64,000 bases of DNA from Auanema rhodensis. Its lineage: Eukaryota > Animalia > Nematoda. Numbering within the stretch: the first letter of the stretch is position 1; each line of letters begins with the position of its first letter. The stretch spans positions 14,384,001-14,448,000 of the forward strand of contig OZ059900.1 of assembly GCA_964057225.1 (NCBI GenBank), in the 5' to 3' direction. Shown piece by piece: positions 22,996 to 63,337 of this stretch. Position numbers and translations under genes: made by a program. Under the pieces are notes generated by a model. That model did not search any database, was not told the origin of the DNA, and saw nothing but the letters and a program-made list of their open reading frames with translations.

Positions 22996-24057
22996 TCAAT
23001 TACGATGAAAAAAATTGAAATTTCGTTTTCTAGTGTCCATTAAACTGAATTCATAAATTCGTGAAGAGAGATGTTGATAAATGTCATCCATTGATTGATC
23101 TAGAGGATCTGGTTGACGATATAGTTCACTCATTATATAATGAGGAAATTTTTCAGCGCAAATAGTAAAGAAAAATGCAGGACAAATATGACTTCCAGCG
23201 GCTGTAATTTGACGATCATAGCTTTGGATCAAATCAAATAATTGCTTACAGCTTTTTGCATCAGAAGCAGGAGATAAATTTTTCATTTTCCTCAATAATT
23301 GAAGTTTATCTGTAGCATATCTCATATATGCATCTTCAAGTGCTTTTCTCAGTAAGAGATAGTTGTTTTCATTAGGTTCAATACCCCTTATAACGACCAA
23401 AGCTTTATCGGATAAGCCTTCGAGTAAAATGTTCACTTTATCAAGTATGGAATATTGTGAATTTTGATGTATCATGTTATTAAATCTTGACCAATACAGT
23501 TTGAAATTTTCGGGTGTACCATCGAAAGTCGGTATTTGTGTTACCGGACGTTGAATGTGATTGCTTGTTTGTAACAATTGTAATAAATTTGAATAAATTT
23601 GTGTTGTTTCGGAACCAGTGCTTTCGATTACTTTTTCTTTCTTTTTCTCGGGAAGTAGTGATTCCACGAATGCAATTGCTGTTTTAATATGACTGATACG
23701 GTCAAGGAGTAATAATCTTTGTTCGTCAGCTATATTGTAAGCTTGACGATTGTTTGGATTTTCTTCAAGTTCTTCGTATAATGCTTTCATTTCGTTTCGA
23801 AGTTCCTTATCAGAATCTTTGAAAACGGTTTGGTATTTTTCTATGTTTCTGTTCACTGTGTCGAGAGCAGTAGAGAGCTCGTTCAATACCAATTCATGAT
23901 TGCGTAAAGTTGATTGCAGTAAAATAATTCTATCGTATGTTATTTCTGAATCAGATACCCCGGCGGGTTCGTTGTCGAGAAGATTTGCGTAACGTTTGAG
24001 CAAAACGGATAAGAAGTCGTATGAACGACGAATGTCGCCAACAAATGAGGAGGCCAT
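22996..24057 (-). pseudogene. gag: Truncated BEL gag (first ~346 aa) running into array DNA
   Basis: Identical to the N-terminus of ORF 30538-33651 up to MDTRKRN, followed by 7 array-derived codons. Confidence 0.92.
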
Positions 24058-24412
24058 TTCTAACGCTGTGTGAGGCGTAATAGGTAAGCTTCTATAGCTG
24101 ATAATGATGAATAAAATTCAGAAAATGAGAGAGAACAAGAAATGAAAGTTGTACAAAGTACAACAAATGAGTATGAGATATACGACTTGTCGTATCTTGG
24201 AGCGTTATTATGCTCCGAAATTATATCGATTACTGCAGGCAAATTCACGCCTGAGCTGATGGACTTAAGAGTCGCCACCAAATTAAATGATAAAGTACCT
24301 GTTGAAGCAGTGACCTGAGTCGTGATGGTCGATGCACCAATGTCGCTTAGGCGAAGGTATTCGGTTGTCGGTTTTCCGAAAAAATAATGAAAAATAATCG
24401 CTAACCGCGACA
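23019..24412 (-). mobile_element. Truncated inverted duplicate of the 5' end of the BEL/Pao insertion (short LTR, PBS, gag N-terminus)
   Basis: Reverse complement of 30183-31576. The flank 24413-24969 matches 30182-29626, including diagnostic unit variants, so this is a copy of the same insertion and not a new one. Confidence 0.95.
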
Positions 24413-27900: not shown

Positions 27901-30182
27901 ATACTCACGACTATACTACCGAGGATTGAATTTGCACTTAAAAACTTTCATTAAGAGTGTGAGTTTGAATTAAAGTAGAAAAATGAAACACTGTCTCTAA
28001 CATATCTTGATTTATGGCCTACTTTACTCAAAGAGCTAATTGAAGTTTGGTGTTACAATGAACAATTGATTAACGCTGACGTTTCAATTTTTTTCATCGT
28101 AATTGAGATAGAACATTTAAATTAAATGGAAATGTTTAACAATTTAGAAAAAAAACACAAGCTCAAATCACTTTTGAAAAAACAGAAAGTTTAAAACAAC
28201 CTTTTTTCTAATAATTATCTTTTTTATCCGACTTTTGGAAAGAAACAAAAATATCATAAGATTCAATAACGATGAATCAGAACAAAAACATTCTCCCCGG
28301 CCGGGAATTGAACCCGGGTCTCGCATGTGACAGACGCGGATACTCACCACTATACTACCGAGGATTGAATTTGCACTTAGAAACTTTCATTGAGAGTGTG
28401 AGTTTGAATTAAAGTAGAAAAATGAAACACTGTCTCTAAGATATCTTGATTTATGGCCTATTTTACTCAAAGAGCTAATTGAAGTTTGGTGTTAGAATGA
28501 GCAATTGATTAACGCTGACGTTTCAATTTTTTTCATCGTAATTGAGATAGAACATTTAAATTAAATGGAAATGTTTAACAATTTAGAAAAAAAACACAAG
28601 CTCAAATCACTTTTGAAAAAACAGAAAGTTTAAAACAACCTTTTTTCTCATAATTATCTTTTTTATCCGACTTTTGGAAAAAAACAAAAATAGCATAACA
28701 TTCAATAACGATGAATCAGAACAAAAACATTCTCCCCGGCCGGGAATTGAACCCGGGTCTCGCATGTGACAGACGCGGATACTCACGACTATACTACCGA
28801 GGATTGAATTTGCACTTAAAAACTTTCATTAAGAATGTGAGTTTGAATTAAAGTAGAAAAATGAAACACTGTCTCTAACATATCTTGATTTATGGCCTAC
28901 TTTACTCAAAGAGCTAATTGAAGTTTGGTGTTAGAATGAACAATTGATTAACGCTGACGTTTCAATTTTTTTCATCGTAGTTGAGATAGAACATTTAAAT
29001 TAAATGGAAATGTTTAACAATTTAGAAAAAAACACAAGCTCAAATCACTTTTGAAAAAGCAGAAAGTTTAAAATAACCTTTTTTCTAATAATTATCTTTT
29101 TAATTCGACTTTTGGAAGAAAACAAAAATAGCATAACATTCAATAACGATGAATCAGAACAAAAACATTCTCCCCGGCCGGGAATTGAACCCGGGTCTCG
29201 CATGTGACAGACGCGGATACTCACCACTATACTACCGAGGATTGAATTTGCACTTAGAAACTTTCATTAAGAGTGTGAGTTTGAATTAAAGTAGAAAAAT
29301 GAAACACTGTCTCTAACATATCTTGATTCATGGCCTACTTTACTCAAAGAGCTAATTGAAGTTTGGTGTTAAAATGAACAATTGATTAACGCTGACGTTC
29401 CGTTTTTTTTCATCGTAATTGATATAGAACATTTAAATTAAATGGAAATGTTTAACAATTTAGAAAAAAAACACAAGCTCAAATCACTTTTGAAAAAACA
29501 GAAAGTTTAAAACAACCTTTTTTCTAATAATTATCTTTTTTATCCGACTTTTGGAAAAAAACAAAAATAGCATAACATTCAATAACGATGAATCAGAACA
29601 AAAACATTCTCCCCGGCCGGGAATTGAACCCGGGTCTCGCATGTGACAGACGCGGATACTCACCACTATACTACCGAGGATTGAATTTGCACTTAGAAAC
29701 TTTCATTAAGAGTGTGAGTTTGAAATATAGTAGAAAAATGAAACACTGACTCTAACATATATTGATTTATGGCCTACTTTACTCAAAGAGCTAATTGAAG
29801 TTTGGTGTTAAAATGAACAATTGATTAACGCTGACGTTCCGTTTTTTTTCATCGTAATTGAGATAGAACATTTAAATTAAATGGAAATGTTTAACAATTT
29901 AGAAAAAAAACACAAGCTCAAATCACTTTTGAAAAAAAAGAAAGTTTAAAACAACCTTTTTTCTAATAATTATCTTTTTTATCCGACTTTTGGAAAAAAA
30001 CAAAAATAGCATAACATTCAATAACGATGAATCAGAACAAAAACATTCTCCCCGGCCGGGAATTGAACCCGGGTCTCGCATGTGACAGACGCGGATACTC
30101 ACGACTATACTACCGAGGATTGAATTTGCACTTAGAAACTTTCATTAAGAGTGTGAGTTTGAAATATAGTAGAAAAATGAAA
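24970..30182 (-). repeat. Tandem tRNA-Asp array, segment 2 (about 12 full tRNA copies, one partial copy, two internal deletion junctions)
   Basis: The unit resumes in the original orientation, with junctions at 26614/26615 and 26966/26967. Confidence 0.95.
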
Positions 30183-30254
30183 TGTCGCGGTTAGCGATTA
30201 TTTTTCATTATTTTTTCGGAAAACCGACAACCGAATACCTTCGCCTAAGCGACA
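30183..30254 (+). repeat. 5' LTR, only 72 bp
   Basis: Starts TGTCGC, ends GCGACA, is followed by the PBS, and aligns to the two ends of the 305-bp 3' LTR. Confidence 0.9.
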
Positions 30255-30255
30255 T

Positions 30256-30268
30256 TGGTGCATCGACC
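30256..30268 (+). promoter_or_regulatory. Primer binding site, tRNA-Gly(GCC)
   Basis: TGGTGCATCGACC lies 1 nt after the LTR and is complementary to ...GGUCGAUGCACCA, the 3' end of nematode tRNA-Gly(GCC) as recalled. Confidence 0.88.
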
Positions 30269-30537
30269 ATCACGACTCAGGTCACTGCTTCAACAGGTAC
30301 TTTATCATTTAATTTGGTGGCGACTCTTAAGTCCATCAGCTCAGGCGTGAATTTGCCTGCAGTAATCGATATAATTTCGGAGCATAATAACGCTCCAAGA
30401 TACGACAAGTCGTATATCTCATACTCATTTGTTGTACTTTGTACAACTTTCATTTCTTGTTCTCTCTCATTTTCTGAATTTTATTCATCATTATCAGCTA
30501 TAGAAGCTTACCTATTACGCCTCACACAGCGTTAGAA

Positions 30538-33500
30538 ATGGCCTCCTCATTTGTTGGCGACATTCGTCGTTCATACGACTTCTTATCCGTTTTGCTCAAA
30601 CGTTACGCAAATCTTCTCGACAACGAACCCGCCGGGGTATCTGATTCAGAAATAACATACGATAGAATTATTTTACTGCAATCAACTTTACGCAATCATG
30701 AATTGGTATTGAACGAGCTCTCTACTGCTCTCGACACAGTGAACAGAAACATAGAAAAATACCAAACCGTTTTCAAAGATTCTGATAAGGAACTTCGAAA
30801 CGAAATGAAAGCATTATACGAAGAACTTGAAGAAAATCCAAACAATCGTCAAGCTTACAATATAGCTGACGAACAAAGATTATTACTCCTTGACCGTATC
30901 AGTCATATTAAAACAGCAATTGCATTCGTGGAATCACTACTTCCCGAGAAAAAGAAAGAAAAAGTAATCGAAAGCACTGGTTCCGAAACAACACAAATTT
31001 ATTCAAATTTATTACAATTGTTACAAACAAGCAATCACATTCAACGTCCGGTAACACAAATACCGACTTTCGATGGTACACCCGAAAATTTCAAACTGTA
31101 TTGGTCAAGATTTAATAACATGATACATCAAAATTCACAATATTCCATACTTGATAAAGTGAACATTTTACTCGAAGGCTTATCCGATAAAGCTTTGGTC
31201 GTTATAAGGGGTATTGAACCTAATGAAAACAACTATCTCTTACTGAGAAAAGCACTTGAAGATGCATATATGAGATATGCTACAGATAAACTTCAATTAT
31301 TGAGGAAAATGAAAAATTTATCTCCTGCTTCTGATGCAAAAAGCTGTAAGCAATTATTTGATTTGATCCAAAGCTATGATCGTCAAATTACAGCCGCTGG
31401 AAGTCATATTTGTCCTGCATTTTTCTTTACTATTTGCGCTGAAAAATTTCCTCATTATATAATGAGTGAACTATATCGTCAACCAGATCCTCTAGATCAA
31501 TCAATGGATGACATTTATCAACATCTCTCTTCACGAATTTATGAATTCAGTTTAATGGACACTAGAAAACGAAATTCAGAACATGACTCACATAATTCAC
31601 CAAATCGTGGAAAACATGTTGATAAAACTTTCGACAAATCCACTAAAAAGATTTGGACTTGTGTTTTTTGTGGTAAAGAAGGACATCCATCTTATTATTG
31701 CCGTACTTATGACACACCACAGAAAAAACGTGAAATCTTAAAGAACAAAGAAGTATGCTGGCTTTGTTTCTCTACTTCACATCGCAGTCGTGATTGTTCT
31801 CGACCGAAATGCCCGAAATGCAAAAATGAGCACAACAGTTGCTTATGTCTAAATTTAGATCGTGAAACAAAGAGTCCTGTAAAACCTATATCGTCCACAA
31901 GCATGATTATAACAGAAAGTGCAGGACAACAAACTCCAGACCTTACAGTCTCACAAAATAAAAATGACATCATTTCTACACCAACTGTATCACAAACAGT
32001 ACCTACAGTACAACCAGCATTTTTCAATCATCTACCAGTAACATTAATAGTTACTGAACCTAAGAATACACAATTACAATTGCTCACACATACCGAGGAT
32101 ACCCATGATATCGAGATGAGTCAAATTGTATTGAAAACAGCTATGACACATATATTCAGTTACACACAAAATAAATATATCACAGTAAAGGTAGTGATTG
32201 ACAGTGGCTCTATGCGGTCTTTCATACGTAGTGATATAGCTAAGGATCTTCAATTGCCTATTAACAAAGTTCAACATCGCACATTCTTTGGAATAGGTGG
32301 CCTCAGCGAAACACATGAATGTAAAGAAGTGAAAACTATTTTTTATACTTCTAATGGCAGTATCATCATAACCAACATGCTTACGAAACCATTCATAGCT
32401 ACATCATTAAGAGCTCCACTTTTAGACAATAATGATCGTTCATTCATTAAAAGAAACAATATAACTTTAGCTAATCCAATGATTGATGGTCAGGCATTTG
32501 AACCAGATATTCTAATTGGATTAGATCGCTATAAGTTATTCGTTCATATGAATTCTGAACTTGAGTTACCCTCTACATTAAGAATGCAGAATACCAGTTT
32601 CGGTTATACCTTGTATGGGGAAATACCATATCAAAATCATTCTGTTACGTTAATAACAATTAATGATAAACCATTACAACATAATGATATGCTTCGATAC
32701 ATATTTGAAATTGATAGCTTAGGAATTAATACTTCTGAAGCTGGAATTGACACAACTATTGATTATTACGAAGATTATTCAAAACAGTTGACACTAACCA
32801 ATCATCGTATTGAAGCTCCTTTACCTTTGAAATCAAATTATCATCAATTACCAGATAATAAAGGTTTAGCCTTTTATCGATTTTTGGCATTGTTCAAAAC
32901 TTTACAAGCAAATCCTTCGAAATTGGAAATGTACAGGAAAATTATTGATGATTATATCGATAACGGTATCATTGAAGAAGTTCCTTTTGAAACTTCCAAC
33001 AATAATCATAATTCTGATATTATATGTCATTATATTCCACATCATGGGGTATGGAATACAAACAAGCCGAATAAACCTTTACGAGTTGTTTTCGATGCTT
33101 CAGCTAAAACTAAGGGTAAATTATCCCTTAACGACATACTATATACTGGAAAAAGTTTTGTGAACAATATTTTCAACATTCTCATTGCTTCAAGAATAAA
33201 ACCAATCATTATTACTTGTGATATTCAATCAGCCTTTTTACAAGTAGGCTTACAGAAGCAACATCGGGATCTTTGCCGTTTCTTTTGGGTAAAGGATCCT
33301 CAAGGAAGTTGTAACTCAAGTTATACTAAAGTTTTTCGATTCAAACGCATACCATTTGGATTGACTGCCTCACCTAGCATTCTAAACATGAGTGTAAATT
33401 GGTATTTATGCTCTTTGAATACTGACTTATCAGATGAAATATTAAATATATTATATGTAGATAATATTCTATTATTTGCTGATAGTATAGATGAAGCTCA

Positions 33501-33651
33501 ACAGAAATGTTCACTTACACAACAATTATTTCAAAATATTTCGATGCATGTTTGTGAATTCGCATCCAATAAGTCAGAAGCTCTTCAGCACCTTCATAAA
33601 GATGATATTCTCTCTGATTGTCCACTAAAAAATTCTTGGAGTACCTTATAA
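30538..33651 (+). CDS. gag-pol: BEL/Pao polyprotein part 1: Gag, three zinc knuckles, aspartic protease, reverse transcriptase
   Basis: IPTFDG..F..YW..F (DUF1759-type Gag); CVFCGKEGHPSYYC, CWLCFSTSHRSRDC and CPKCKNEHNSCLC; protease IDSGS; RT motifs RVVFDAS, DIQSAFLQV, PFGLTASP and YVDN. The frame is broken by an extra A at 33627-33632. Confidence 0.96.
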   Translation: MASSFVGDIRRSYDFLSVLLKRYANLLDNEPAGVSDSEITYDRIILLQSTLRNHELVLNELSTALDTVNRNIEKYQTVFKDSDKELRNEMKALYEELEENPNNRQAYNIADEQRLLLLDRISHIKTAIAFVESLLPEKKKEKVIESTGSETTQIYSNLLQLLQTSNHIQRPVTQIPTFDGTPENFKLYWSRFNNMIHQNSQYSILDKVNILLEGLSDKALVVIRGIEPNENNYLLLRKALEDAYMRYATDKLQLLRKMKNLSPASDAKSCKQLFDLIQSYDRQITAAGSHICPAFFFTICAEKFPHYIMSELYRQPDPLDQSMDDIYQHLSSRIYEFSLMDTRKRNSEHDSHNSPNRGKHVDKTFDKSTKKIWTCVFCGKEGHPSYYCRTYDTPQKKREILKNKEVCWLCFSTSHRSRDCSRPKCPKCKNEHNSCLCLNLDRETKSPVKPISSTSMIITESAGQQTPDLTVSQNKNDIISTPTVSQTVPTVQPAFFNHLPVTLIVTEPKNTQLQLLTHTEDTHDIEMSQIVLKTAMTHIFSYTQNKYITVKVVIDSGSMRSFIRSDIAKDLQLPINKVQHRTFFGIGGLSETHECKEVKTIFYTSNGSIIITNMLTKPFIATSLRAPLLDNNDRSFIKRNNITLANPMIDGQAFEPDILIGLDRYKLFVHMNSELELPSTLRMQNTSFGYTLYGEIPYQNHSVTLITINDKPLQHNDMLRYIFEIDSLGINTSEAGIDTTIDYYEDYSKQLTLTNHRIEAPLPLKSNYHQLPDNKGLAFYRFLALFKTLQANPSKLEMYRKIIDDYIDNGIIEEVPFETSNNNHNSDIICHYIPHHGVWNTNKPNKPLRVVFDASAKTKGKLSLNDILYTGKSFVNNIFNILIASRIKPIIITCDIQSAFLQVGLQKQHRDLCRFFWVKDPQGSCNSSYTKVFRFKRIPFGLTASPSILNMSVNWYLCSLNTDLSDEILNILYVDNILLFADSIDEAQQKCSLTQQLFQNISMHVCEFASNKSEALQHLHKDDILSDCPLKNSWSTL

Positions 33652-36600
33652 TGCTCTAAGTGATTCCCTTTCAATTCGATTCAATATACTGGAACTCTCA
33701 ACAGTAACCAAACGAAACGCATTACAACAATTACATTCAGTTTATGATCCTTTGGGTATAACAAATCCATTAATTTTACCCTTGAAGGTTATTCTTAGAG
33801 ATATTTTTGCACTTAAAACAGAATGGGATGATACTATACCTTCTGAATTATCAGCCTCTTGGACATCAATAATTAACGAAATTAATTATGCTAAGGTTAC
33901 TGTACCTCGTGTACTATCACCATCTATTGAAGAAGGTACATTATGGATCTTTGCTGACGCTAGTTCAACAGCGTTAGCTGTGTGTGCTTACATACAGACA
34001 AACAACAAAATGAGTTCTATTCTAGCAGGTGAAAGCCGCTTATCTCCTAAAACACCAATTACAATTCCACGTATGGAACTCTTAGCTATTCGATTAGCTA
34101 TGAGACTTTCTCACACAATATTAATGGAATTACCATGTAAAAAACTAAATATTGTAAGTGATAGCAGCATTGCGTTATCATGGATTTTAACAAATAAGCA
34201 ATTACCTGACTTCATAGCAAAACAAGTTCAAAATGTACAACATATGACCCGTGTATTAGAAGAACATTCGATTAATGTTCAATTTTACCATGTTACTACG
34301 GATTATAATCCGGCTGACATTGGTTCACGAGGAGCCAATAAATATCAACTTCAGGAGTCTATGTGGCTTCTTGGACCACAGTGGATTCTTAACAGAACCG
34401 TTCAAGCTTTAACACCATATGGTTCCTTGCAAGTGATGCATGTTTCACCTGTATCATTACTTATAGCTCAAGCTATATCTGTACCCTTGGAACATAACCT
34501 AGCTTATCATAACGGTCATTTTGCAACTTTACGTTTGTTAGCCCGTTTGGCTAAAATTATAAAAATTTGGCATTTAAAAACATTTAAAAATCAAAATGGA
34601 CATAAATTACGAAATATTTCACAAATATCAACATCATATCCCGTTTTAACAACTGATTTGAAGATACTACGTACTATTTTAATTCGACAAGCTCAAGATC
34701 ATCTCATTATTGATGATTTACGACGACAATATCCTGGTTATCATTTCTATCTTGATGATAACGAGATAATTCGAGTAAGAAGCCGATTACAAAATTCTTT
34801 ACTATCCTATGATACAAAAAACCCAATTTATCTTCCTCGCAACTCATTATTCACTCAACACATAATTATGGACGCTCATCGCGCATCTTTTCATCAAGGA
34901 AAAGAATTTTTGATCACACATCTTCGTCAAACTTATTTTATTGCTCGCGCTGCAGCAATTATAAAACAAACTTTGAAGAAATGTCATTTATGCAATAAAT
35001 ATCAATCTTTACCATATGGCACTCCTGATATGCCTTCATTGCCTAAAGATAGAGTGATATTAACTAAACCATTTCTTAACACTGGGTGCGACTTATTTGG
35101 ACCTATTATGCTTAAAAGTGGACATAAGGTCTATGTTTGTCTTTTTACTTGCTTAACCATACGTGCCATTCATCTTGAAATGGTCTATGATCAAACAGCG
35201 ACTTCATTTATGAACGCTTTCACTCGTTTCATAGCCCGACGAGGTTTACCAACCACAATGCGAAGTGATTGTGGGGGTAATTTTATTCTCGGAGCTCAAT
35301 TAATTGAGACAATACAAAAATCAGCTGAATTTAATTTCACCCCAGCTGATATTGTAGTCCATCTAGCCAAAAATAACATAAATTGGCTCTTTAACACACC
35401 TAAGTCTCCATGGAAAGGAGGTTCTTGGGAAAGAATGGTGGGAATTACTAAAAATGCAATGAAAAAGGCAATACAAAGAAATAAATTAACATTTGATGAA
35501 TTATTAACTTTAATTGTCAAAATTGAAGCAGTCATTAACACAAGGCCTTTAACACATCCAGATCCAAATAATATAAATCACGTACCTATTCGTCCTGTCG
35601 ATTTCATTTCGCCTGGTCTTGTTCTTTCCCTACCGGATGATTGTGGTTTTCGAGTTTATAATAATTCCATTGATATTCCTGTAATACAAAACGTTGAACA
35701 AGCATTAGAAACTTTACAACTTACTTCTGATGCAGCTACGATGTTTTGGGATAAATTTCAAACAGAATATTTGATATATATTCGTGATATATACAAACAT
35801 TCCCGAAAACAACCTTCAGCAAATGCCAATAAACCTAATATTGGTGAAATTGTAGTTATACATAACGATAACTTACCTCGTGGTCAATGGAAACTTGGTC
35901 GAATCACAGAACTTATAAGTAGTTCTGATGGATTCATTCGTACAGCTAAAGTTCTCACTCCAGCTGGGAACATCATATCACGTTCCTTAAATCATCTATA
36001 TCCACTTGAATTACGAAGTGTTTTACCTGATATGACATCAATTCCTCGATCTACTCCTTCCGAAGACACTTCATTGTCTTTGAAGGTAGGATCTGCTTCG
36101 GATATGATGAACCTTGATGCTCAACCAATACAGGAATATATTATAAGATCAAACTCACCTGTACCTTCAATCCATGAAACGAACAATGTGGTTACATGTC
36201 CTGAACCAATAGATATTAATAATCCTCAAAAAATTTACATACCTACGTCCAAAATTTCTTCGATACATAATCCGATCCTTGAGGAAGAAGCTGAATTACA
36301 ATTATGGGGTCCAGGTCATACGCCTGACGATAATCGTAAAAAATTACAAAAGAAAAACACAAGTAAAGCAAAACAAACCATAATTTTGCCTACCATTGAC
36401 CAAAACGACGTAAAACCATCTACTGAAACAAACGAAAAACGTGTTCGCACCTTACCTTTACGGGATCACATCACATACGCTTCGCGAAAGAATTTCAAAT
36501 CAGCAATGACGTCTGCAATTTTAATTTTTACAATAATATCGATATTTTTACCCGTAGCATCTGCAAATTCTGTAGTATGTGATGAGGCAAAGTTTTTATC

Positions 36601-38452
36601 CATACATTTGCTTGGAAACCCACATTGTGCTCCTCATCTTGCCATGTGGTCATTGTTCTTACCACTTTGTTGTTTATTTGGCATCCTTTGTTGTTGTATA
36701 CGCATAGGATTCCATCAATATCGATATAATTCCTGGTCTAATACTATTCGTTACATATCTTCTTTTTTCACACTTAGACCTCATACTCCGGAACAGAATG
36801 ATATTGAATTAGGAGTTATTGAACCTCCTCCAACTTCATCTGAGAATATTCCACATATAGAACCTAAATTATATCCTCCATTTTGGAAAAGAGGTTCTCG
36901 ATTATCAATTATCAGTATACTAACGATATTTCTGATTAATAATGCTACTGCTTGTACCGATCATCACGTTATTCATTCGGTTTCTACACATTGTCTGAAT
37001 CGTACTCAATGTTATCACCAATATAGTGATCAAATAGTTTTTTCTCCTGGAGTTAAAGATTTATGCCTGGATATAAAATTTAAAAATCATTCTATTGGTT
37101 ATATTCAAATTCGAAAATTATATACAAGTTATGAATGTAAGAAAACCACAAAATTTTTTACAAAGGCTACTTTGCCTAAACTAACTGTTGATTTTCGATG
37201 TGCTCATATGGGATCTTGTGATCAAACTTGTGAAACTATGAATCATCGCTCTCGTATTTCTGAATTCGAACCATATAATTATCCAACACAATCCAAATGT
37301 GTCCGGTCTTTAGCACATATATGGCGTTGTTTGACATTTTGGGAAAACCCTTGTCTTTTCTACAAATTAGAACATGTACCTACTTCGGACGACATATTTG
37401 AAGTATTTAAATGTGAAGATTGGACAACATCTTCAACTTTTGAAATTACAACACATATTGTTAAAGATAAAAATATTTATAATATCACAATTCCACCATA
37501 TTTGAAGATGAATTACTCTTTTTTCAATATGACGATCAATACACAAGACAAACCTCCTACTCCACTTCATAATTATTATTTTGTTGCTTCAAACAATCAA
37601 ATCTTTGCTGTTGAACCACATTTTCCATTTATGGTACAATGTATTTCGAAGGCAGACACTTCCGACAATTTTTCAAGATGTACAACGGTTATCGATTGTA
37701 CTTGTAACAAAATCAATAATGATGTTGCTGGCTGTATATGTCCACAACATAATTTCACACATTTTTCTCATATTTTACCTCCGTATATGGCAAATACGGA
37801 AACAATCTATAAACCCGATACATCCTTAACTTTTCGAACTCAGTCTGATGAAACTACAGTTTCAATTGATTCTGAACTTTTATATGACAGTAATACATTT
37901 TCCTATGATATACCTTGTCGTCCCTTATTGATCAGTCTCTCCGGATGTTATTCCTGTGGGCAGGGTGCATCTGCATTGTTTTCTTGTATGTCATCTAAAG
38001 AAACATGGATACCGATCGAGTGTTCAAAAGATGTATTCATGATTAAATGTTCACCCTTCAATGAAATTACAAATATCAATATTAAAAGAGATAATTCAAT
38101 CATAAATGAAGTTTGTCATACTAAATGTAATCATGAAAAAATTGATATAATTGTAACGGGACAATTATATTTTAATTCATCTACTAATGAACCAAATGAA
38201 ATTCATTCAAATCAGAATTCAGTTATAATACCTGACATAATTCCTTTTTTGAAACTTTTTAAAGAACACTGGATGATGTTTTCAATCTGCGTTGTTTTTC
38301 TGATCATCATATGTTTTTTGGGATACCTAGGTTGTACTCCAGCCATTTATTTTTTCTTGATCACAGCTTTCCGTACTATTAAAATCATAATAGATACAAC
38401 AACCAAGTTTTTCTATATTCTTAGAAATCTTTGTTTTGATAGAAGATTTTAA
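33630..38452 (+). CDS. pol-env: BEL/Pao polyprotein part 2: RT C-terminus, RNase H, integrase, envelope. Continues part 1 across a +1 frameshift (the ORF track starts it at 33752).
   Basis: The frame opens with KILGVPYN...TKR...YDPLG. RNase H: FADAS, RMEL, SDS, NPADIGSRG. Integrase: HHCC, GCDLFGP, RSDCG, WERMV, plus a DUF5641-type PRGQWKLGRI. The C-terminus is a Cys-rich glycoprotein with a TM segment. Confidence 0.95.
36953..38452 (+). other. env: Phlebovirus Gc/G2-like class II fusion glycoprotein domain (about 499 aa)
   Basis: Follows the signal-like LSIISILTIFLINNATA. Contains RCAHMGSC, PCLFY, EVFKCEDW and LSGCYSCGQGA, many N-x-S/T sequons, and a C-terminal TM. Nematode BEL elements are known to carry this family. 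Confidence 0.88.
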
Positions 38453-38560
38453 CATTGAACTAATTCCGTACTATCCTTAAAAATCTTACTATATAAGCAT
38501 CATGGGTCATTATGCGACGGACAACGTCGCAAAAGGCCAATGGCTTAGCTGCGGCGGCAC

Positions 38561-38865
38561 TGTCGCGTCGCGGTTAGCGATTATTTTTTATTCTTTTTTC
38601 TATGTTTTGTTCCATTTCAGTTTTGTTTTTATCGTTTTCCTTTACTTTGTCTATTTCAGATTGTACTTTTCGGCCCGCCTTCCCATATCTTCATCTTTGG
38701 GATCGGAAAATACGATATACCTCAACTTACTTCAACGGAGTATAGACGATCTATATTTTGTTGATATTGTTAACTTTCTCTTTAATAAAGCATTCTACCA
38801 CTGACTATCTGTTCTATTAATTCTCAGCGGAATACCGACAACCGAATACCTTCGCCTAAGCGACA
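38561..38865 (+). repeat. 3' LTR, 305 bp
   Basis: TGTCGC...GCGACA, AATAAA at 38784-38789, followed by the TSD. A near-identical LTR is at 63031-63337. Confidence 0.93.
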
Positions 38866-53800: not shown

Positions 53801-54556
53801 CTCTAACATATCTTGATTCATGGCCTACTTTACTCAAAGAGCTAATTGAAGTTTGGTGTTAAAATGAACAATTGATTAACGCTGACGTTCTGTTTTTTTT
53901 CATCGTAATTGAGATAGAACATTTAAATAAAATGGAAATGTTTAACAATTTAGAAAAAAAACACAAGCTCAAATCACTTTTGAAAAAACAGAAAGTTTAA
54001 AACAACCTTTTTTTTAATAATTATCTTTTTTATCCGACTTTTGGAAAAAAACAAAAATAGCATAACATTCAATAACGATGAATCAGAACAAAAACATTCT
54101 CCCCGGCCGGGAATTGAACCCGGGTCTCGCATGTGACAGACGCGGATACTCACCACTATACTACCGAGGATTGAATTTGCACTTAGAAACTTTCATTAAG
54201 AGTGTGAGTTTGAATTATAGTAGAAAAATGAAACACTGTCTCTAACATATCTTGATTCATGGCCTACTTTACTCAAAGAGCTAATTGAAGTTTGGTGTTA
54301 GAATGAACAATTGATTAACGCTGACGTTTCAATTTTTTTCATCGTAATTGAGATAGAACATTTAAATTAAATGGAAATGTTTAACAATTTAGAAAAAAAA
54401 CACAAGCTCAAATCACTTTTGAAAAAACAGAAAGTTTAAAACAACCTTTTTTCTAATAATTATCTTTTTTATCCGACTTTTGGAAAAAAACAAAAATAGC
54501 ATAACATTCAATAACGATGAATCAGAACAAAAACATTCTCCCCGGGCGGGAATTGA
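38866..54556 (-). repeat. Tandem tRNA-Asp array, segment 3 (439 bp unit, about 35 full tRNA copies)
   Basis: Regular 438-439 bp period from 39050 to 53974. The segment ends inside a tRNA T-arm. Confidence 0.98.
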
Positions 54557-55318
54557 TCAGCCAGGCCTTAAGGATACTAATGGCGACGCGCGCCACCACT
54601 CCGGACCAGAAAAGAAAGAAAATGATGATAGCAGGCCAGGCGACGGAACTGCTGACAGACGTCAGCCTGTTCCACATATGGACGGTCGCCGACCGGCAAC
54701 CCGCGACCGACTTCCAGCTGGGACAAATCGAGGAGGAAGAAGGATAACAGCTGCACGAGGTGAATTCATAGTTTTTCTTTTCTTCTCTTTTCTTTTCTTT
54801 TCTTTTTCTTTTTATATTGTTTTCATTTTTTTTAATATTATTCCTATTACACTATTATTCCTATTCTAGTATTCTAATTCTAATTCATTTATATATATAT
54901 TTTTTTCTCTTTTGTTTCTTTTCCTTAAAAGGTCTAATTTCTTATAGCTGAGGTCAGCTACTTTTTCAATATAAGGCATGTTCCATACGTGTCTTATAAA
55001 GAAGGCGGTTGACAACGTCAACCGACTTTTGGTTAATAGAATTCAATAAGAAACTAGACCTGAACTACTTTTTGTATAAATTCAATTATATTTGTAATTA
55101 ATATTTTGCTATATAAACCCCTGAGAAAGCAACTAGGTTGGCTTTTCTCATAACATGTAGTTTCATTTATTTGATTATTGTATTTTGCTTTTATAGTTGT
55201 ATTTCCATATTCTGAATAAACTTCTTTTTCTCTACTCTCTGTTACTTTTACAATGGCATTCACACTATTAAAGTCCATATGGTTACCTAGCCGGAACCCT
55301 AGGAACCAATATGGAACG
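54557..55318 (+). promoter_or_regulatory. Putative LTR region (left boundary undefined)
   Basis: TATATAAA at 55110-55117, AATAAA at 55215-55220 and the PBS at 55319 follow U3-R-U5 order. There is no second copy to confirm this and no CA terminus. Confidence 0.55.
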
Positions 55319-55339
55319 TGGAGGTTCCACCGAGATTCG
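55319..55339 (+). promoter_or_regulatory. Primer binding site, tRNA-Gln
   Basis: TGGAGGTTCCACCGAGAT(TCG) is complementary to ...AUCUCGGUGGAACCUCCA, the 3' 18 nt of animal tRNA-Gln including CCA. Confidence 0.9.
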
Positions 55340-56449
55340 TCTATAAGAGACGAATCTCTATGGACCATTGCCGCTACTTTTCTCACCTTTAAATTACTTT
55401 CTCTTTCTTTGAAATCCTTTTTACTCTAAAAATTTATCTTGATTTCATATCCAAAAATTCTAATTAAATTTTATATTTCAAACTTTCAAGTCAATTTTGT
55501 ATCTAAAACAAAAACTCCAATTTAATCTAGTAATTCGAATTTATCTCTAAATATCATTCTTCTAACATCATTTCTGATATATCTATTGGAAAAAAAAATG
55601 TCTTATACATATTATCTATTACAATCTATATTCCTACTTTGTTCCTCTACTTTCCTGTATGTTTAAAGCATATAATGCATGAAAACTCTTTTTGGAACAA
55701 GCATATCAAAATATTTAACCACGAATAATATTAAAAACTATCAATTCATGAAATATCTTAAAGACATTTATTCATATTGCAACACTTACCCATAAGTCAT
55801 CTTGAAAACATCTTATCACAAGCTAAATTTTGAAAATATCTATTCATAAATCATTCTGAAAACATTGATTCATAAACAAAACCACTATTCTTGATATCTA
55901 ACGCATTTTTATGAGAAAGCCCCGTGAGAAACAATACCAGACATTCTCGGGACATCGCGCGGAGGCGTACACTTTTTGATATAAGACGCGCAATCATTTG
56001 AAATTAACCCTTTTTGGTCCCGTATGTGAATTAAAGAATATTTTGAAGTTGAGTGGTCCCACCTAGCAAGACCCAGGGGAACAGAAGTAACGTTAAAAGG
56101 GAACGTCTTTTGGGGGTTTGCTTAGGTAAGAGAAGTCTGGAAAAGTGAGTATGAGAAGCCTGTGTACCTGATCTTGTCCATGACTGAAAAGGAGCAATAC
56201 ACAGACCACTGTCTCATATCTCATGCCTCTTCGAGAGATAAGAACTTGGTCCTTTGCTAAAGGTCACACGTAGTTGCGGACTCGTGTATGAACCTGACCA
56301 GGCTATTCTCCGACTAGAGACCCGCTGCAGGCTGGCCCCCTGACAGGAACAGGAGTCGCGCATACCAACCCCATATTGTCTCTTACGTTTTGTATAATAT
56401 AAGCTCAGTCTTCGTTGGTTAATAATTTCCTTCCAGGAAACCAACAAAG

Positions 56450-59400
56450 ATGGCTGACGCAGCGAATCAAAACCCTCCGCCGGGAAATATTGCCCAAAAT
56501 GCTACGAATAGCGCAGAGAAAACTCAGACAGTGGAAGCAGCACTGCATAGAAACCAAAGAAAAAGAGGACCACCGGATGCATTCCGACCAGATGCGAAAT
56601 ATCCGAAAACGAACGCGAAATCAAAGAAATTACCCCCTATTCCGGGTACACCGCTAACTGCTAAGCAACTTTATACTACTGCTATTAAAACTACTAGGCA
56701 TGCAATTAGCTTGAATAAGAATAAAACATCATCCAGTAAATCTACGCCCAAACGCTCTTCTCACTCTCCAAAAACAGTTGTTAATACCGGCACTAACACT
56801 TGTCCTCCAAATCACACTTCTCCTCAACGCCTTGTTCAAACCGCAAATGCGGAAATCCTCACCTCTCCTATTCCTAGAAACTCTCCCTTTTCCACTGATC
56901 AATCTTTGCACGGGCACTCTCTGTCTCCTGTCTCTTCTTCGTCAGACAATAACGTAAATTTGACTTCGAATGTTACAGAGCAGAGAAGTCGCCCTCAAAT
57001 GGCAGAGCAGATGGAGCAAGACAACTCTCCTATTGCAAGAGCCCACAACGTTTCTATTCGCCATCACAAACCTACGCTTTATGATGGATCGGTTCCATTC
57101 AACCTCTACATGCAAAGACTAGAAGGATATTTCGATGCCCTTCAAGTCCCTATTGCCGAGAGACTTTCCCATCTCTATCTACTTCTCGGAACGGATAGAG
57201 CCGCTGAAGCTCTTCGAACTATACCAGCAGAAGACTTACGCCAGGGATGGAACCACGTCAAACGCATACTATCGGAGAAATTACAACCTCCAGAAAAGAG
57301 AGATGCAGCATTCACAAAACTCACTCATTTGAAACAAGGAGAGCACGAAACGGTACAAAATTTCGCTCAACGCTGCAGAAACCTTGCCTATGAATCATGC
57401 AACATGGACTCCACAGCCGATGAAAGAATACTACGAGTTTCATTCTTAGGAGGACTACGAAAGACTTTAAGAACACATGTCAATAACCGCAGCCCTATCA
57501 CCTTTGATGCAGCCGTGACTATTGCCGAAACTGTGGAAGCTGACGAGGATCCTTCGCTCTTGGTCAACAACTTGATTAAAGACGTGGAACAACTAGAGAT
57601 TACTAACGGTCTCATAAACCACATGAGAGCATCACAACAGGAGAAAATCTATGACGGATCACAAACACACCAATCAAGAACATTCTATGGAAATCAATCA
57701 AGACCACAACACCCACAAGAGCAATGGAATCAAAGAAGAGGAGGATACCGCTCACCAAGATACCAAGAGGATCGACAAAATAACCGTCACAACTTCAGAC
57801 AGGATAACAGAAACAATGGATATCAACGAGGATACAACAATTATCGTAGCCCCCAACGGTACGATAGATACAATGATCGATACAACAGCAGAGGAAACGA
57901 TCGATATGATAGCAGAAGGAACGATCGACAGGAGCACAGAGGAAACGACCGATACAACCGCGGAAACTGTCCTGATCGCGGATTTCAACAACGAAATCGC
58001 AGCACTTCATATGGACCACATAACAGGCACAGAGATCGCACAAGAAGCCCCAGCGTCCGTTTTCACGTTAACAAAGTAGAAAAGGAAACAGTCAAAACAA
58101 AGAAGACACTTCCGTTCATACCGCTATTCTTATCCGTCATTGCCCTATCTATGATACCTTGCCAGGCAGACAACACCTATCAACTCTGCATTGGCAAACG
58201 AGGAGGTATTTTCCTCGAACCACCTCGCCCAACCACCTGCTCAGACTATGCACACAAGGACGGAGTCGAGATAAAAACAGTGGAACTATTCGCAGAAAAT
58301 ATGAATTACAAGGAATGGGAAGCATGGAAATGCGCCAAGGAAATCTATAAAACGTGCGCCCACGACTTATTCTTCATCAGGGAAAATAACGTTACATTAC
58401 TCCGAATAGAACCAGCCACTCCACAAGAATGCCAAACAGCCATTCAAGAAAGACGACACATGGATAACGACCTCAATCGCGAAGCACCAGGACTATTCAA
58501 AGCCCCTATGCCATCTAATACACAATCAAAATCGTTTTGGGCATCCTCTTGCACAACCAAGTCAAGATTCACCTTAGAAAGAGGAATGATGACTAGCCTA
58601 CACGATGACACTATAATCTCCGACTTATTCATCAACACTGAAGGATGCACTAAGCAACAAGGAGTATGCAACACCACCAACGCAGTTATCACATGGATCC
58701 CACCCAATGATCATCGAAATTGCGACTACACGACATTAGGGAAATTCGAAGCACTAATCAACAATGATACTGTATTAATCTCGGAAATACAAGGGGCATT
58801 CATTCTCAAAAACAACACGCCAGACCCTACAGCTACAAGATGTATGAATACAAGCATCTACTCAACTGATAGTGGTACGTACATTTCCATCAAGGACTTA
58901 AAAACACACCGACGTCAAAAGAGGATGGCACCCCAAGAATACCCTACGAGATTCTTCAATATCACTATCTACAAATCACTTCGCCTCACAGACAGTTCTA
59001 CAGGTATACTACCTATGTACCAGACATATCGAAATAGGAAAAGACTGGACAACGCTTATAACCTTATGGAATATCTCAAGACATCTAGCGTACACATAGG
59101 TTTCATCAAATTCCTACAACTAGATTCATCAAAACTGAAGAACCGACTCTTATGGCACAACTACACTGACATCAACATGGTTATCCTGCACACACTTGCA
59201 GAAGCTGAGATTCGACTTTCTACGAAAATTGCCATCGAACACCTACTGCCATCAGAGATCACGGCAAAACTCAGCAAGCAAATCACTATCAGCGACTTTG
59301 CCACACGTCTACTCAACTACGAAGGCGATTATCTCGACCGAGCAAGACAAATAGCAATTGAAATAGCTCACACACCTACCACTCTGGCAACAGGAGAGAC

Positions 59401-60010
59401 TATTCCATCAATGGAGGACTATCTGTACCAACTGTACCCACCCAGGATGACAAAACTGCCTAGATCACGCACTGACACACAGTTCTACACCCAGATGGAT
59501 CAAATACAGGAGTTTCTTAATTATCTAGAGCAAAACAATCGTCTAACTCGGATATCAAAAGAACAAAGAGAGACAGAAAATAAGAAATGGGCAGATCTCA
59601 CAAAACAGGCAAATTCGTCAGCAATCGTCTTTCCCAACTATACCCTCATCTTCAACGGACACGCACAAAATTATGGGTTGCCCAAAAATCAACCTACAAT
59701 CAGACCTATCACGGATGAAGACAGCAAATTATTTCAACAAGCATATCTTCAGCTCATTGAGTCACCTGGTGCTAGCCCCACAACCACCACTACTACAACC
59801 ACCACAACCACTACATCGACTACCACAACAACTGCCCCGACAACTACTACTCATCGGACGTCTCCACCTCAACCTACAACTACACCAAGGAGATATTACT
59901 ATTACCAGAGTACAACAACTCCAGTAACTCCACCACCACGTCCTCTCACCACCACATCCCGCAGGGAATCTACTAGGACACTTCCAACAACTCGGACTAC
60001 TACAAAGTGA
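56450..60010 (+). CDS. gag-env: Polyprotein part 1: Gag capsid, Arg/Gly/Asn/Tyr-rich region, internal signal peptide, N-terminal glycoprotein half, mucin-like tract
   Basis: KPTLYDGSVPF...LKQGEHETVQNFAQR (retrotransposon capsid); hydrophobic LPFIPLFLSVIALSMIPCQA at 58109-58168; Cys-rich ectodomain; furin-like RRQKR. It ends at an in-frame TGA, and the frame stays open afterwards. Confidence 0.88.
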   Translation: MADAANQNPPPGNIAQNATNSAEKTQTVEAALHRNQRKRGPPDAFRPDAKYPKTNAKSKKLPPIPGTPLTAKQLYTTAIKTTRHAISLNKNKTSSSKSTPKRSSHSPKTVVNTGTNTCPPNHTSPQRLVQTANAEILTSPIPRNSPFSTDQSLHGHSLSPVSSSSDNNVNLTSNVTEQRSRPQMAEQMEQDNSPIARAHNVSIRHHKPTLYDGSVPFNLYMQRLEGYFDALQVPIAERLSHLYLLLGTDRAAEALRTIPAEDLRQGWNHVKRILSEKLQPPEKRDAAFTKLTHLKQGEHETVQNFAQRCRNLAYESCNMDSTADERILRVSFLGGLRKTLRTHVNNRSPITFDAAVTIAETVEADEDPSLLVNNLIKDVEQLEITNGLINHMRASQQEKIYDGSQTHQSRTFYGNQSRPQHPQEQWNQRRGGYRSPRYQEDRQNNRHNFRQDNRNNGYQRGYNNYRSPQRYDRYNDRYNSRGNDRYDSRRNDRQEHRGNDRYNRGNCPDRGFQQRNRSTSYGPHNRHRDRTRSPSVRFHVNKVEKETVKTKKTLPFIPLFLSVIALSMIPCQADNTYQLCIGKRGGIFLEPPRPTTCSDYAHKDGVEIKTVELFAENMNYKEWEAWKCAKEIYKTCAHDLFFIRENNVTLLRIEPATPQECQTAIQERRHMDNDLNREAPGLFKAPMPSNTQSKSFWASSCTTKSRFTLERGMMTSLHDDTIISDLFINTEGCTKQQGVCNTTNAVITWIPPNDHRNCDYTTLGKFEALINNDTVLISEIQGAFILKNNTPDPTATRCMNTSIYSTDSGTYISIKDLKTHRRQKRMAPQEYPTRFFNITIYKSLRLTDSSTGILPMYQTYRNRKRLDNAYNLMEYLKTSSVHIGFIKFLQLDSSKLKNRLLWHNYTDINMVILHTLAEAEIRLSTKIAIEHLLPSEITAKLSKQITISDFATRLLNYEGDYLDRARQIAIEIAHTPTTLATGETIPSMEDYLYQLYPPRMTKLPRSRTDTQFYTQMDQIQEFLNYLEQNNRLTRISKEQRETENKKWADLTKQANSSAIVFPNYTLIFNGHAQNYGLPKNQPTIRPITDEDSKLFQQAYLQLIESPGASPTTTTTTTTTTTTSTTTTTAPTTTTHRTSPPQPTTTPRRYYYYQSTTTPVTPPPRPLTTTSRRESTRTLPTTRTTTK

Positions 60011-63030: not shown

Positions 63031-63337
63031 TGTCGCTTCGGCGAAGGTATTCGGTTGTCGGTATTCCGCTGAGAATTAATAGAACGGATAGTCAGTGGTA
63101 GAATGCTTTATTAAAGAGAAAGTTAACAATATCAACAAAATATAGATCGTCTATACTCCGTTGAAGTAAGTTGAGGTATGTCTTGTATTTTCCGATCCCA
63201 AAGATGAAGATATGGGAAGGCGGGCCGAAAAGTACAATCTGAAATAGACAAAGTAAAGGAAAACGATAAAAACAAAACTGAAATGGAACAAAACATAGAA
63301 AAAAGAATAAAAAATAATCGCTAACCGCGACGCGACA
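63031..63337 (-). repeat. 3' LTR, 307 bp
   Basis: Matches 38561-38865 apart from a few substitutions and a 2-nt length difference near 63180. Confidence 0.93.

What the first reader, a model, noticed from the sequence alone, without database searches (positions are those of the whole stretch)
38784..38804. BEL LTR carries a second 16-nt site complementary to the D-arm of its primer tRNA-Gly (candidate bipartite PBS)
Seen: AGCATTCTACCACTGA (38789-38804) directly follows the AATAAA in the long LTR and is conserved in the second copy (TCAGTGGTAGAATGCT at 63092-63107). Recalled: TCAGTGGTAGAATGCT is nt 12-27 of tRNA-Gly(GCC), the same tRNA whose 3' end matches the 13-nt PBS at 30256. A perfect 16-mer match to the primer tRNA is unlikely by chance. 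Inference: one tRNA could pair with the PBS at the 5' end and with the last nucleotides before poly(A) at the 3' end. That would bridge the RNA ends and guide first strand transfer, analogous to the bipartite PBS of yeast Ty3. I am not aware of this being described in BEL/Pao elements.
Basis: partly seen in the sequence, partly recalled or inferred. Interest (0 to 1): 0.82.

Follow-up and report, generated by a model that had tools for sequence, protein, structure and literature searches.

The report
Second primer-tRNA docking box in LTR
A retrovirus-like BEL/Pao element carries, right after its poly(A) signal, 16 bases that pair with the same tRNA-Gly it uses as primer; five related nematode elements have a comparable box at the same spot, so it is probably a real second docking site for the primer, and I found no description of it for this virus family.

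Summary
AGCATTCTACCACTGA (38789-38804; reverse complement at 63092-63107) is the exact complement of nt 12-27 of the host tRNA-Gly(GCC). The 3' end of that tRNA matches the element's short PBS (10 nt, a mismatch, then 2 nt).

It is not chance and not private to this family. Six of seven tRNA-Gly-primed nematode BEL/Pao families examined carry a box: this one, C. remanei, two in A. ceylanicum, N. americanus and H. contortus. Each box is a 10-16-nt complement of the tRNA's 5' third, 0-16 nt after AATAAA, followed by a T/GT-rich stretch. The tRNA segment differs between families (nt 5-15, 5-16, 6-15, 6-21, 9-22, 12-27), so complementarity is what is kept, not a shared motif.

The seventh family (same genome) instead has a 17-nt complement of the anticodon arm just after its PBS. 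Families primed by other tRNAs show no tRNA-Gly match.

Best reading: an auxiliary primer-docking box that complements a short PBS.

First readers of this scan noted the same box on other copies in this genome. Follow-up agents reported comparable boxes in sister families.

The parts
38789..38804 (+). 16-nt box AGCATTCTACCACTGA, complement of tRNA-Gly(GCC) nt 12-27 (D arm), in the 3' LTR of copy A
   Evidence: box:tRNA duplex -27 kcal/mol; mostly unpaired in the fold of the LTR RNA
38784..38789 (+). AATAAA poly(A) signal, overlapping the box by one base
   Evidence: the same AATAAA-then-box order in five other families
38805..38826 (+). T/GT-rich stretch after the box; probable poly(A) downstream element and start of U5 (inferred)
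   Evidence: a T/GT-rich stretch follows the box in all six families; general LTR architecture in PMC3601003
38561..38865 (+). 3' LTR of copy A (305 bp, TGT...ACA, with a 5-bp TCGCG duplication near its start)
30183..30254 (+). 5' LTR of copy A, 72 bp; internal deletion derivative that lacks the box and the AATAAA
   Evidence: full 300-bp 5' LTRs in other copies
30256..30269 (+). PBS TGGTGCATCGACCA: 10 nt, then an A.C mismatch, then 2 nt, complementary to the 3' end of tRNA-Gly(GCC)
30183..38865 (+). BEL/Pao element copy A. It encodes gag (DUF1759), RT, Pao domain, integrase and a Phlebovirus_G2-like env. The reading frame is broken at 33651/33752. TSD is TGAAA.
   Evidence: intact copies have one 2657-aa ORF
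63092..63107 (-). Same 16-nt box in the LTR of copy C
63031..63332 (-). 3' LTR of copy C; the element is inverted and runs off the window end
23019..24412 (-). Copy B: inverted, 100% identical duplicate of the first 1393 bp of copy A, with the short LTR and the PBS (24326-24339) but no box

Best explanation
The 16-mer is a selected second docking box for the primer tRNA-Gly(GCC).

The PBS of these elements is short (10-13 nt). It pairs only with CCA, the discriminator base and the 3' strand of the acceptor stem. That pairing frees the tRNA's 5' strand. The box, placed right after the poly(A) signal at about the R/U5 boundary, pairs with the freed 5' strand and the D arm (nt 5-27; nt 12-27 in this family). 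The primer is thus held by two duplexes that bracket U5.

Shown here: the complementarity, its specificity for the primer tRNA, its recurrence at the same LTR position in six families with a shifted tRNA register, and its favourable pairing energy.

Inferred: that it stabilises or activates the initiation complex in the 5' leader. Also inferred: because the same box probably ends R, the tRNA's 5' part can pair with the 3'-terminal copy once reverse transcriptase and RNase H have removed the 5' copy, which would help first-strand transfer.

My odds: functional primer docking 0.8; used in the 5' leader 0.55; used at the RNA 3' end 0.35. The last two are not exclusive.
For: 1. The match to the host tRNA is exact, in antisense orientation, and 0 of 300 shuffles of the LTR reach 16 nt. 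Non-primer tRNAs (Asp, Arg) and the sense orientation give nothing.

2. Five further tRNA-Gly-primed BEL/Pao families, at 36-61% amino-acid identity and with LTRs too different to align, carry a box 2-16 nt after AATAAA:
- C. remanei: 14 nt, tRNA nt 9-22.
- N. americanus: 16 nt, nt 6-21.
- H. contortus: 12 nt, nt 5-16.
- A. ceylanicum: 10 nt (nt 6-15) and 11 nt (nt 5-15).
Both LTRs carry the box wherever both were held.

3. The tRNA register shifts between families. F1 and A. ceylanicum share only CTGA, so the common denominator is the tRNA and not an inherited motif.

4. Null control: in 80 chance occurrences of the PBS 14-mer in metagenome contigs, the longest antisense match in the 200 nt upstream reaches 10 nt in 1 of 80 and 11 nt or more in 0 of 80.

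5. A short PBS goes with a box:
- F1: 10-nt PBS, 16-nt box.
- F3: 12-nt PBS, 17-nt anticodon-arm box 26 nt after the PBS.
- Family F2 has a full 18-nt PBS to tRNA-Arg(ACG) and no box in its LTR.

6. Within F1, the box window has diversity 0.022 per column against an LTR mean of 0.0985. It ranks 27th most conserved of 285 windows.

7. Box:tRNA duplexes are -17 to -31 kcal/mol, a net gain even after paying for tRNA unfolding. The box is largely unpaired in the LTR RNA fold.

8. Precedents for auxiliary tRNA contacts exist in Ty1, Ty3, HIV-1 and RSV (PMC5371799).
Against: - There are no RNA data, so the transcript start and the poly(A) site are unmapped. It is unknown whether the box lies in R, in U5, or partly outside the RNA 3' end.
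- Box and PBS on the same 5' leader pair with the tRNA in a crossed, pseudoknot-like order.
- The spacer between box and PBS shows no consistent closing stem.
- The oldest F1 subfamily (84% identity, solo or degenerate LTRs) has 3 mismatches in the box, and two other copies have 1 each. Other LTR blocks are more invariant than the box.
- The four strongylid families share the core CTGAACCACC, so there are only about three independent lineages.
- The tRNA-Gly sequences of the other nematodes were not fetched here. I assumed they equal the host's over nt 5-27.
- F3 does without the box after AATAAA.
Confidence: 0.7

Rival explanations
1. Strict Ty3-like 5'-3' bipartite PBS. The box works mainly as the last nucleotides of the genomic RNA before poly(A). 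One tRNA bridges the PBS at the 5' end and the box at the 3' end, which circularises the genome and guides minus-strand transfer.
For: - The box stays within 0-16 nt of AATAAA in all six families, while its distance to the PBS ranges from 42 to 120 nt.
- It is always followed by a T/GT-rich stretch like a poly(A) downstream element, so it plausibly ends R.
- PBS followed by a 3'-end box is the co-linear, unknotted pairing order with the tRNA.
- The 3'-end context with poly(A) still gives a net -12 to -22 kcal/mol.
- Ty3 is a precedent (PMC5371799).
Against: - The box is in both LTRs, so a 5' copy sits close to the PBS and would compete.
- The Ty3 segments are in U3, which is unique to the RNA 3' end. 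This box is not.
- With the usual nematode spacing (cleavage about 13 nt after the hexamer, from my own knowledge), the boxes of N. americanus (+11 to +27) and A. ceylanicum family 2 (+16 to +27) would lie mostly beyond the cleavage site.
- F3 replaced the box by one that exists only in the 5' leader.
- No transcript ends are mapped.
Confidence: 0.3
2. Relic without function. The box is a piece of tRNA-Gly copied into the LTR by aberrant reverse transcription or by recombination with a nearby tRNA gene, and it persists because the family is young.
For: - F1 and F3 insert into tRNA gene arrays, including tRNA-Gly arrays.
- Most F1 copies are 94-100% identical, so conservation inside the family is weak evidence.
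- The F3 leader looks like a decayed antisense copy of the whole tRNA.
Against: - The box recurs at the same LTR position, always antisense, in six families of five species.
- The relatives fetched from other species have no tRNA gene within 4-6 kb.
- The tRNA register differs between families.
- Read-through into the primer would place tRNA sequence after the PBS, not upstream of U5.
- There is no similarity to the tRNA beyond the clean box edges.
Confidence: 0.08
3. Target or sensor of 5' tRNA-Gly fragments (tRNA halves or tRF-5) rather than of the full primer. This would be either host silencing of the element, or tRNA/tRF pairing over the cleavage site that modulates use of the poly(A) site, for example by masking the 5' copy.
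For: - The box covers exactly the part of tRNA-Gly(GCC) that 5' fragments contain.
- It sits on or next to the predicted cleavage site in every family.
- 5' fragments need no unfolding to pair.
Against: - A silencing target should be lost, not kept, in young active families.
- The box occurs only in elements that also use tRNA-Gly as primer. F2, M. hapla, Mytilus and B. xylophilus elements have none.
- No small-RNA data were available.
Confidence: 0.1
4. Antisense Pol III A-box or TFIIIC-related element, linked to the family's integration next to tRNA genes.
For: - On the minus strand the boxes of N. americanus and C. remanei contain most of the tRNA A box.
- F1 and F3 integrate 62-72 bp upstream of tRNA genes.
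Against: - No B-box-like motif lies on the antisense strand of any of the six LTRs.
- F1 keeps only 7 of the 11 A-box bases.
- The relatives with the box are not near tRNA genes.
Confidence: 0.02

Closest known systems
[quoted passage not shown]
   Same: Both have a short PBS at the 5' end plus a distant segment complementary to internal parts of the same primer tRNA, including the D arm. In both, the second segment lies in the 3' LTR region of the RNA, so a tRNA bridge between the genome ends is conceivable (PMC5371799).
   Different: - The Ty3 segments lie in U3, present only at the RNA 3' end, and also pair with the T arm. The primer there is tRNAiMet.
- Here the box lies after the poly(A) signal (end of R or start of U5) and is present in both LTRs.
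- It pairs with the acceptor 5' strand and the D arm only.
- Bridging has not been shown.
Ty1 (yeast, Pseudoviridae) extended PBS (10-nt PBS plus boxes 0, 1 and 2.1)
   Same: A short PBS is compensated by extra boxes complementary to the T and D arms of the primer, all in the 5' region (PMC5371799). Sister family F3, with its 17-nt anticodon-arm box 26 nt after the PBS, has this layout.
   Different: The Ty1 boxes lie just downstream of the PBS, co-linear with the tRNA. The box studied here lies 42-120 nt upstream of the PBS, inside the LTR, next to the poly(A) signal.
HIV-1 primer activation signal (PAS) in U5, and the RSV U5-T-arm contact
   Same: Both are template segments upstream of the PBS, in the region copied into strong-stop DNA, that pair with an internal part of the primer tRNA in a crossed topology. 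They promote the step from initiation to elongation (own knowledge; summarised in PMC5371799).
   Different: Those contacts are 7-8 nt and pair with the T arm. Here the box is 10-16 nt, pairs with the acceptor 5' strand and D arm, and sits at the R/U5 boundary.
Belpaoviridae (BEL/Pao) replication as currently described
   Same: tRNA-Gly or tRNA-Arg primers, and a PBS just after the 5' LTR (ICTV profile PMC8742986).
   Different: - The profile describes a single 18-nt PBS and calls replication poorly understood.
- The tRNA-Gly-primed nematode families seen here have 10-13-nt PBSs plus a second box.
- The main BEL/Pao survey (PMC3118150) does not mention the PBS or tRNA at all.

Membership tests
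BEL/Pao (Belpaoviridae) LTR retroelement | Pol with RT, the Pao domain (PF05380) and integrase with DUF5641; gag with DUF1759; LTRs with TG..CA ends | tested here: met
   Pfam hits on both ORFs. The LTR pair and the 5-bp TSD TGAAA are seen. The best protein relatives are nematode BEL/Pao elements.
BEL/Pao (Belpaoviridae) LTR retroelement | PBS complementary to the 3' end of tRNA-Gly or tRNA-Arg | tested here: met
   The PBS matches host tRNA-Gly(GCC), but over only 10 nt plus 2, not 18.
Ty3-type 5'-3' bipartite PBS | Short 5' PBS that pairs only with the acceptor end of the primer | tested here: met
   The PBS is 10-13 nt in all seven tRNA-Gly-primed families.
Ty3-type 5'-3' bipartite PBS | Second complementary segment present only at the 3' end of the genomic RNA (in U3) | tested here: not met
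   The box lies downstream of AATAAA and is in both LTRs of intact copies. It is therefore in R or U5, not in U3. Its exact placement relative to the transcript ends could not be mapped.
Ty3-type 5'-3' bipartite PBS | Second segment pairs with internal arms (T and D) of the same tRNA | tested here: met
   The D arm and the acceptor 5' strand are covered (nt 5-27). There is no T-arm complement.
Ty3-type 5'-3' bipartite PBS | tRNA-mediated joining of the genome ends, promoted by nucleocapsid | not testable with these tools
   This needs annealing assays or RNA-RNA proximity ligation.
Ty1-type extended PBS | Extra boxes adjacent to and downstream of the PBS, co-linear with the tRNA | tested here: not met
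   The F1 leader after the PBS has no match longer than 6 nt, and its box lies upstream, in the LTR. Sister family F3 does meet this feature.
HIV-1 PAS-type contact | Template segment upstream of the PBS, within the strong-stop template, complementary to an internal tRNA segment | tested here: met
   The box lies 42-120 nt upstream of the PBS in intact 5' LTRs. It pairs with a different arm and is twice as long.
HIV-1 PAS-type contact | Promotes the step from initiation to elongation of reverse transcription | not testable with these tools
   This needs primer-extension assays.

The most novel reading that the evidence does not exclude
In tRNA-Gly-primed Belpaoviridae, the last nucleotides of R are themselves a complement of the primer tRNA's 5' third. 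The tRNA first clamps both ends of U5 in the 5' leader. When strong-stop synthesis and RNase H remove that copy, the same tRNA segment is passed to the identical box at the extreme 3' end of the genome. This tethers donor and acceptor for minus-strand transfer. It would be a primer-guided strand-transfer device not known in this form from any retroelement. If R is very short, the box would be most of R.
Probability: 0.25. Interest if true: 0.85.

Novelty: new variant of a known kind. Interest (0 to 1): 0.66.

Why it matters
Replication of Belpaoviridae is described as poorly understood and is inferred from other families (PMC8742986). A conserved second primer contact would change that picture in several ways:
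- It would explain how these elements prime from PBSs of only 10-13 nt.
- It would give a sequence signature for annotating primer use and the R/U5 boundary in BEL/Pao LTRs.
- It would add a third lineage beside Ty1 and Ty3 in which a short PBS is backed by internal tRNA contacts, suggesting that this solution arose repeatedly.
- Its fixed place at the poly(A) site makes the old question of how the first strand transfer finds its acceptor directly testable in nematodes with public RNA data.

Tried and rejected
- **RNA evidence.** No listed run was shown to hold the stretch. The three small runs of the same species label gave one 67-nt contig piece far from the LTR. The transcript start and poly(A) site therefore stay unmapped.
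- **Chance.** Rejected by shuffles and by the 80 chance metagenome loci.
- **Metagenome scan.** The scan for the PBS 14-mer returned only chance hits. I checked one directly: L149 lies inside a bacterial ORF. The scan was useful only as a null. Two of those contigs were labelled human-gut metagenome; they entered only the automatic count, and I did not inspect, save or search for more of them.
- **Closing stem.** A stem joining box and PBS is not consistent across families.
- **tRNA-Gly variant for the PBS mismatch.** None found.
- **B box on the antisense strand.** None found.
- **B. xylophilus, M. hapla, Mytilus and two metagenomic BEL elements.** They use other primers, so they cannot test the tRNA-Gly box.
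- **Earlier scan note s1-401382.** It reports another family of this genome with an 18-nt complement of the tRNA 5' end. I could not find it again with four pattern searches, so I leave it untested.
- **Handling of sequences.** Copies were only aligned and compared.

Full report
**Setting**

The window is a tandem array of 102 tRNA-Asp(GTC) genes with a 439-bp period, interrupted by retroelements.

Copy A (30183-38865, + strand) is a BEL/Pao element. It encodes gag DUF1759, RVT_1, the Pao domain, integrase, DUF5641 and a Phlebovirus_G2-like env domain. Its reading frame is broken at 33651/33752. Intact copies elsewhere in the genome have one 2657-aa ORF.

Its 5' LTR is a 72-bp deletion derivative (30183-30254). 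Its 3' LTR is 305 bp (38561-38865), and the TSD is TGAAA. Copy B (23019-24412, - strand) is an identical inverted duplicate of the first 1393 bp. Copy C (63031 to the window end, - strand) is a separate insertion.

**Observation**

The 16-mer AGCATTCTACCACTGA occurs at 38789-38804 and, reverse-complemented, at 63092-63107, and nowhere else in the window even with two mismatches allowed. It overlaps the last A of AATAAA.

The host tRNA-Gly(GCC) genes read GCATCGGTGGTTCAGTGGTAGAATGCTCGCC...CCGGCCGATGCA. The 17-mer used to find them occurs more than 600 times in the genome. The box is therefore the exact complement of nt 12-27.

The PBS at 30256-30269 pairs with the tRNA 3' end over 10 nt, then an A.C mismatch, then 2 nt. 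No host tRNA-Gly variant removes the mismatch.

**Within the family (F1)**

The genome holds at least 50 LTR copies, many of them full 300-bp 5' LTRs followed by the PBS. In intact elements the box is therefore in both LTRs, 62 nt before the PBS.

- The box is perfect in nearly all copies of 87-100% identity.
- It has one change in each of two copies.
- It has three changes in the 84% subfamily, which consists of solo or degenerate LTRs.
- Its diversity is 0.022 per column against 0.0985 for the whole LTR, which ranks it 27th most conserved of 285 windows.
- Another block (38642-38671) is fully invariant, so the box is not the most conserved part of the LTR.

On its own this is only modest evidence of constraint, because the family is young.

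**Sister families in the same genome**

These share 45-47% amino-acid identity with F1 over Pol.

- F2 has a full 18-nt PBS to tRNA-Arg(ACG). It has no second match in its LTR and only a weak 9-mer far down the leader.
- F3 uses tRNA-Gly(GCC) with a 12-nt PBS. After its AATAAA only TTCTAC remains of the box. However, 26 nt after its PBS lies CCCGCGTGGCAGGTGAG, which complements the anticodon arm (nt 26-42): 13 nt exact, 17 with one G.U pair. It is invariant in five leaders of 90-100% identity.

**Other species**

The closest proteins are nematode BEL/Pao polyproteins, so the host is most likely a nematode.

All five that use tRNA-Gly(GCC), with PBSs of 10-13 nt, have a box just after AATAAA:

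| Family | Locus | Box | tRNA nt | Gap after AATAAA | Distance to PBS |
|---|---|---|---|---|---|
| A. ceylanicum 1 | L078 | CTGAACCACC | 6-15 | 3 nt | 120 nt |
| A. ceylanicum 2 | L086 | CTGAACCACCG | 5-15 | 16 nt | 42 nt |
| H. contortus | L084 | ACTGAACCACCG | 5-16 | 5 nt | 86 nt |
| N. americanus | L083 | CTACCACTGAACCACC | 6-21 | 11 nt | 82 nt |
| C. remanei | L085 | TCTACCACTGAACC | 9-22 | 2 nt | 48 nt |

Both LTRs carry the box wherever both were held. In every case a T/GT-rich stretch follows it. Elements with other primers (B. xylophilus, M. hapla, Mytilus) show no tRNA-Gly match.

**Statistics**

- In dinucleotide shuffles, the longest primer-specific antisense match is exceptional for the F1 LTR (16 nt, p<=0.003), the F3 leader (13 nt, p<=0.003) and the A. 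ceylanicum LTR (10 nt, p=0.017).
- None of 16 tests with non-primer tRNAs reached p<0.05.
- As an outside null I used 80 chance occurrences of the PBS 14-mer in metagenome contigs. The longest antisense match in the 200 nt upstream reaches 10 nt once and never 11 nt or more. The six families show 10, 11, 12, 14, 16 and 16 nt.

F1's box and the strongylid boxes share only CTGA, yet all are contiguous complements of one tRNA. What has been kept is pairing with the tRNA, not a motif. The four strongylid families share a core, so I count about three independent lineages.

**How it most likely works**

The PBS covers CCA, the discriminator base and the acceptor 3' strand only. Pairing there frees tRNA nt 1-7. 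The boxes begin at nt 5/6 (strongylids), 9 or 12 and run into the D arm. The freed strand can therefore nucleate a second duplex that opens the D arm, while the T arm stays folded.

Duplex energies are -17 to -31 kcal/mol, a net gain after tRNA unfolding. The F1 box is mostly unpaired in the fold of the LTR RNA.

The pattern of a short PBS with a long box, against an 18-nt PBS without one, fits a compensating docking site as in Ty1 and Ty3.

**5' leader or 3' end?**

- The box keeps within 0-16 nt of AATAAA while its distance to the PBS ranges from 42 to 120 nt.
- It is followed by a likely downstream element, so it plausibly ends R.
- PBS followed by a 3'-end box is the co-linear pairing order.

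For the 5' leader:
- The box is in both LTRs and close to the PBS.
- F3 replaced it by a box that exists only in the leader.
- In N. americanus and A. ceylanicum family 2 the box starts 11-16 nt after the hexamer. It may therefore lie beyond the cleavage site.
- HIV-1 and RSV use contacts upstream of the PBS despite the crossed topology.

The spacer shows no consistent stem that would join box and PBS. With no RNA data I cannot decide. A sequential use, first the 5' copy and then the 3' copy, is possible but purely inferred.

**Rivals**

- A functionless relic is unlikely. The box recurs in species where the elements are not near tRNA genes, and it lies upstream of U5, where read-through into the primer cannot place it.
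- A target of 5' tRNA fragments cannot be excluded. It does not explain why only tRNA-Gly-primed elements carry the box.
- An antisense A-box role lacks any B box.

**Literature**

- The ICTV profile describes one 18-nt PBS to tRNA-Arg or tRNA-Gly and calls replication poorly understood.
- The main BEL/Pao survey never mentions the PBS or tRNA.
- Searches for extended or bipartite PBSs returned only the yeast work.

Within what I could search, the feature is undescribed for this family. It is a new variant of a known kind of primer-template contact.

**Earlier scan notes**

First readers flagged the same box on other copies in this genome. Follow-up agents reported the F3-type leader copy and another family with a U5 complement of the tRNA 5' end. 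I found the F3 box independently before reading those notes. I could not find the other family again.

**Limits**

- The tRNA-Gly genes of the other nematodes were not fetched. The perfect matches to the host tRNA and to the PBSs make identity over nt 1-27 likely but untested.
- Only one element per foreign family was seen.

Noticed in passing
window 30120-30182 and 62959-63030; loci L011, L012, L019, L020, L030, L061, L063, L064: F1 and F3 BEL copies sit 62-72 bp upstream of the 5' end of tRNA genes of several kinds (Asp, Ala, Ser, Gly; also inside a His array), in either orientation. This looks like integration targeted to Pol III genes in a BEL/Pao clade. The strongylid and Caenorhabditis relatives I fetched have no tRNA gene within 4-6 kb.
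   Followed up: partly
whole window; G000 contigs C3, C4, C6, C7: The genome has very large tandem tRNA arrays. The window alone holds 102 tRNA-Asp genes. Genome-wide there are more than 600 tRNA-Gly(GCC) matches and about 790 tRNA-Arg(ACG) 3'-end matches, a few dozen of the latter being F2 PBSs. Arrays of Ala, His and Ser genes also occur.
   Followed up: no
L063:3030-3087 and L061 (sister family F3): The F3 leader has a 12-nt tRNA-Gly PBS, a 26-nt spacer, then a 17-nt complement of the whole anticodon arm (nt 26-42, one G.U pair). Faint similarity to the D-arm complement follows. This is either a Ty1-like extended PBS or a decayed antisense copy of the primer.
   Followed up: partly
window 30183-30254 and 24341-24412: The 72-bp 5' LTR joins roughly the first 34 and the last 38 bases of the 300-bp LTR. 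The same short LTR, 1393 bp of the element and its flank are repeated 100% identically in inverted orientation. This is a recent inverted duplication or an assembly artefact.
   Followed up: partly
window 30266 and L085:3799: F1 and the C. remanei element share the same A at PBS position 11 (TGGTGCATCG-A-CC), which gives an A.C mismatch with tRNA-Gly(GCC). No host tRNA-Gly gene variant matches it.
   Followed up: partly
window 54171-62447: Another insertion of about 8.3 kb interrupts the tRNA-Asp array. It is not homologous to the BEL element. An earlier scan note calls it Gypsy-like.
   Followed up: no
L059/L060 and L065/L066 (sister family F2): F2 copies have 330-339-bp LTRs with a clear TATAAAAG box and an 18-nt PBS to tRNA-Arg(ACG). 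They sit inside other tandem repeats that hold no tRNA gene in the 4-5.5 kb of flank I held on each side.
   Followed up: no
window 38642-38671: This is the only fully invariant block of the F1 LTR across 28 distinct copies. It contains TTTCAGATTG, an initiator-like motif, and may mark the transcription start.
   Followed up: no
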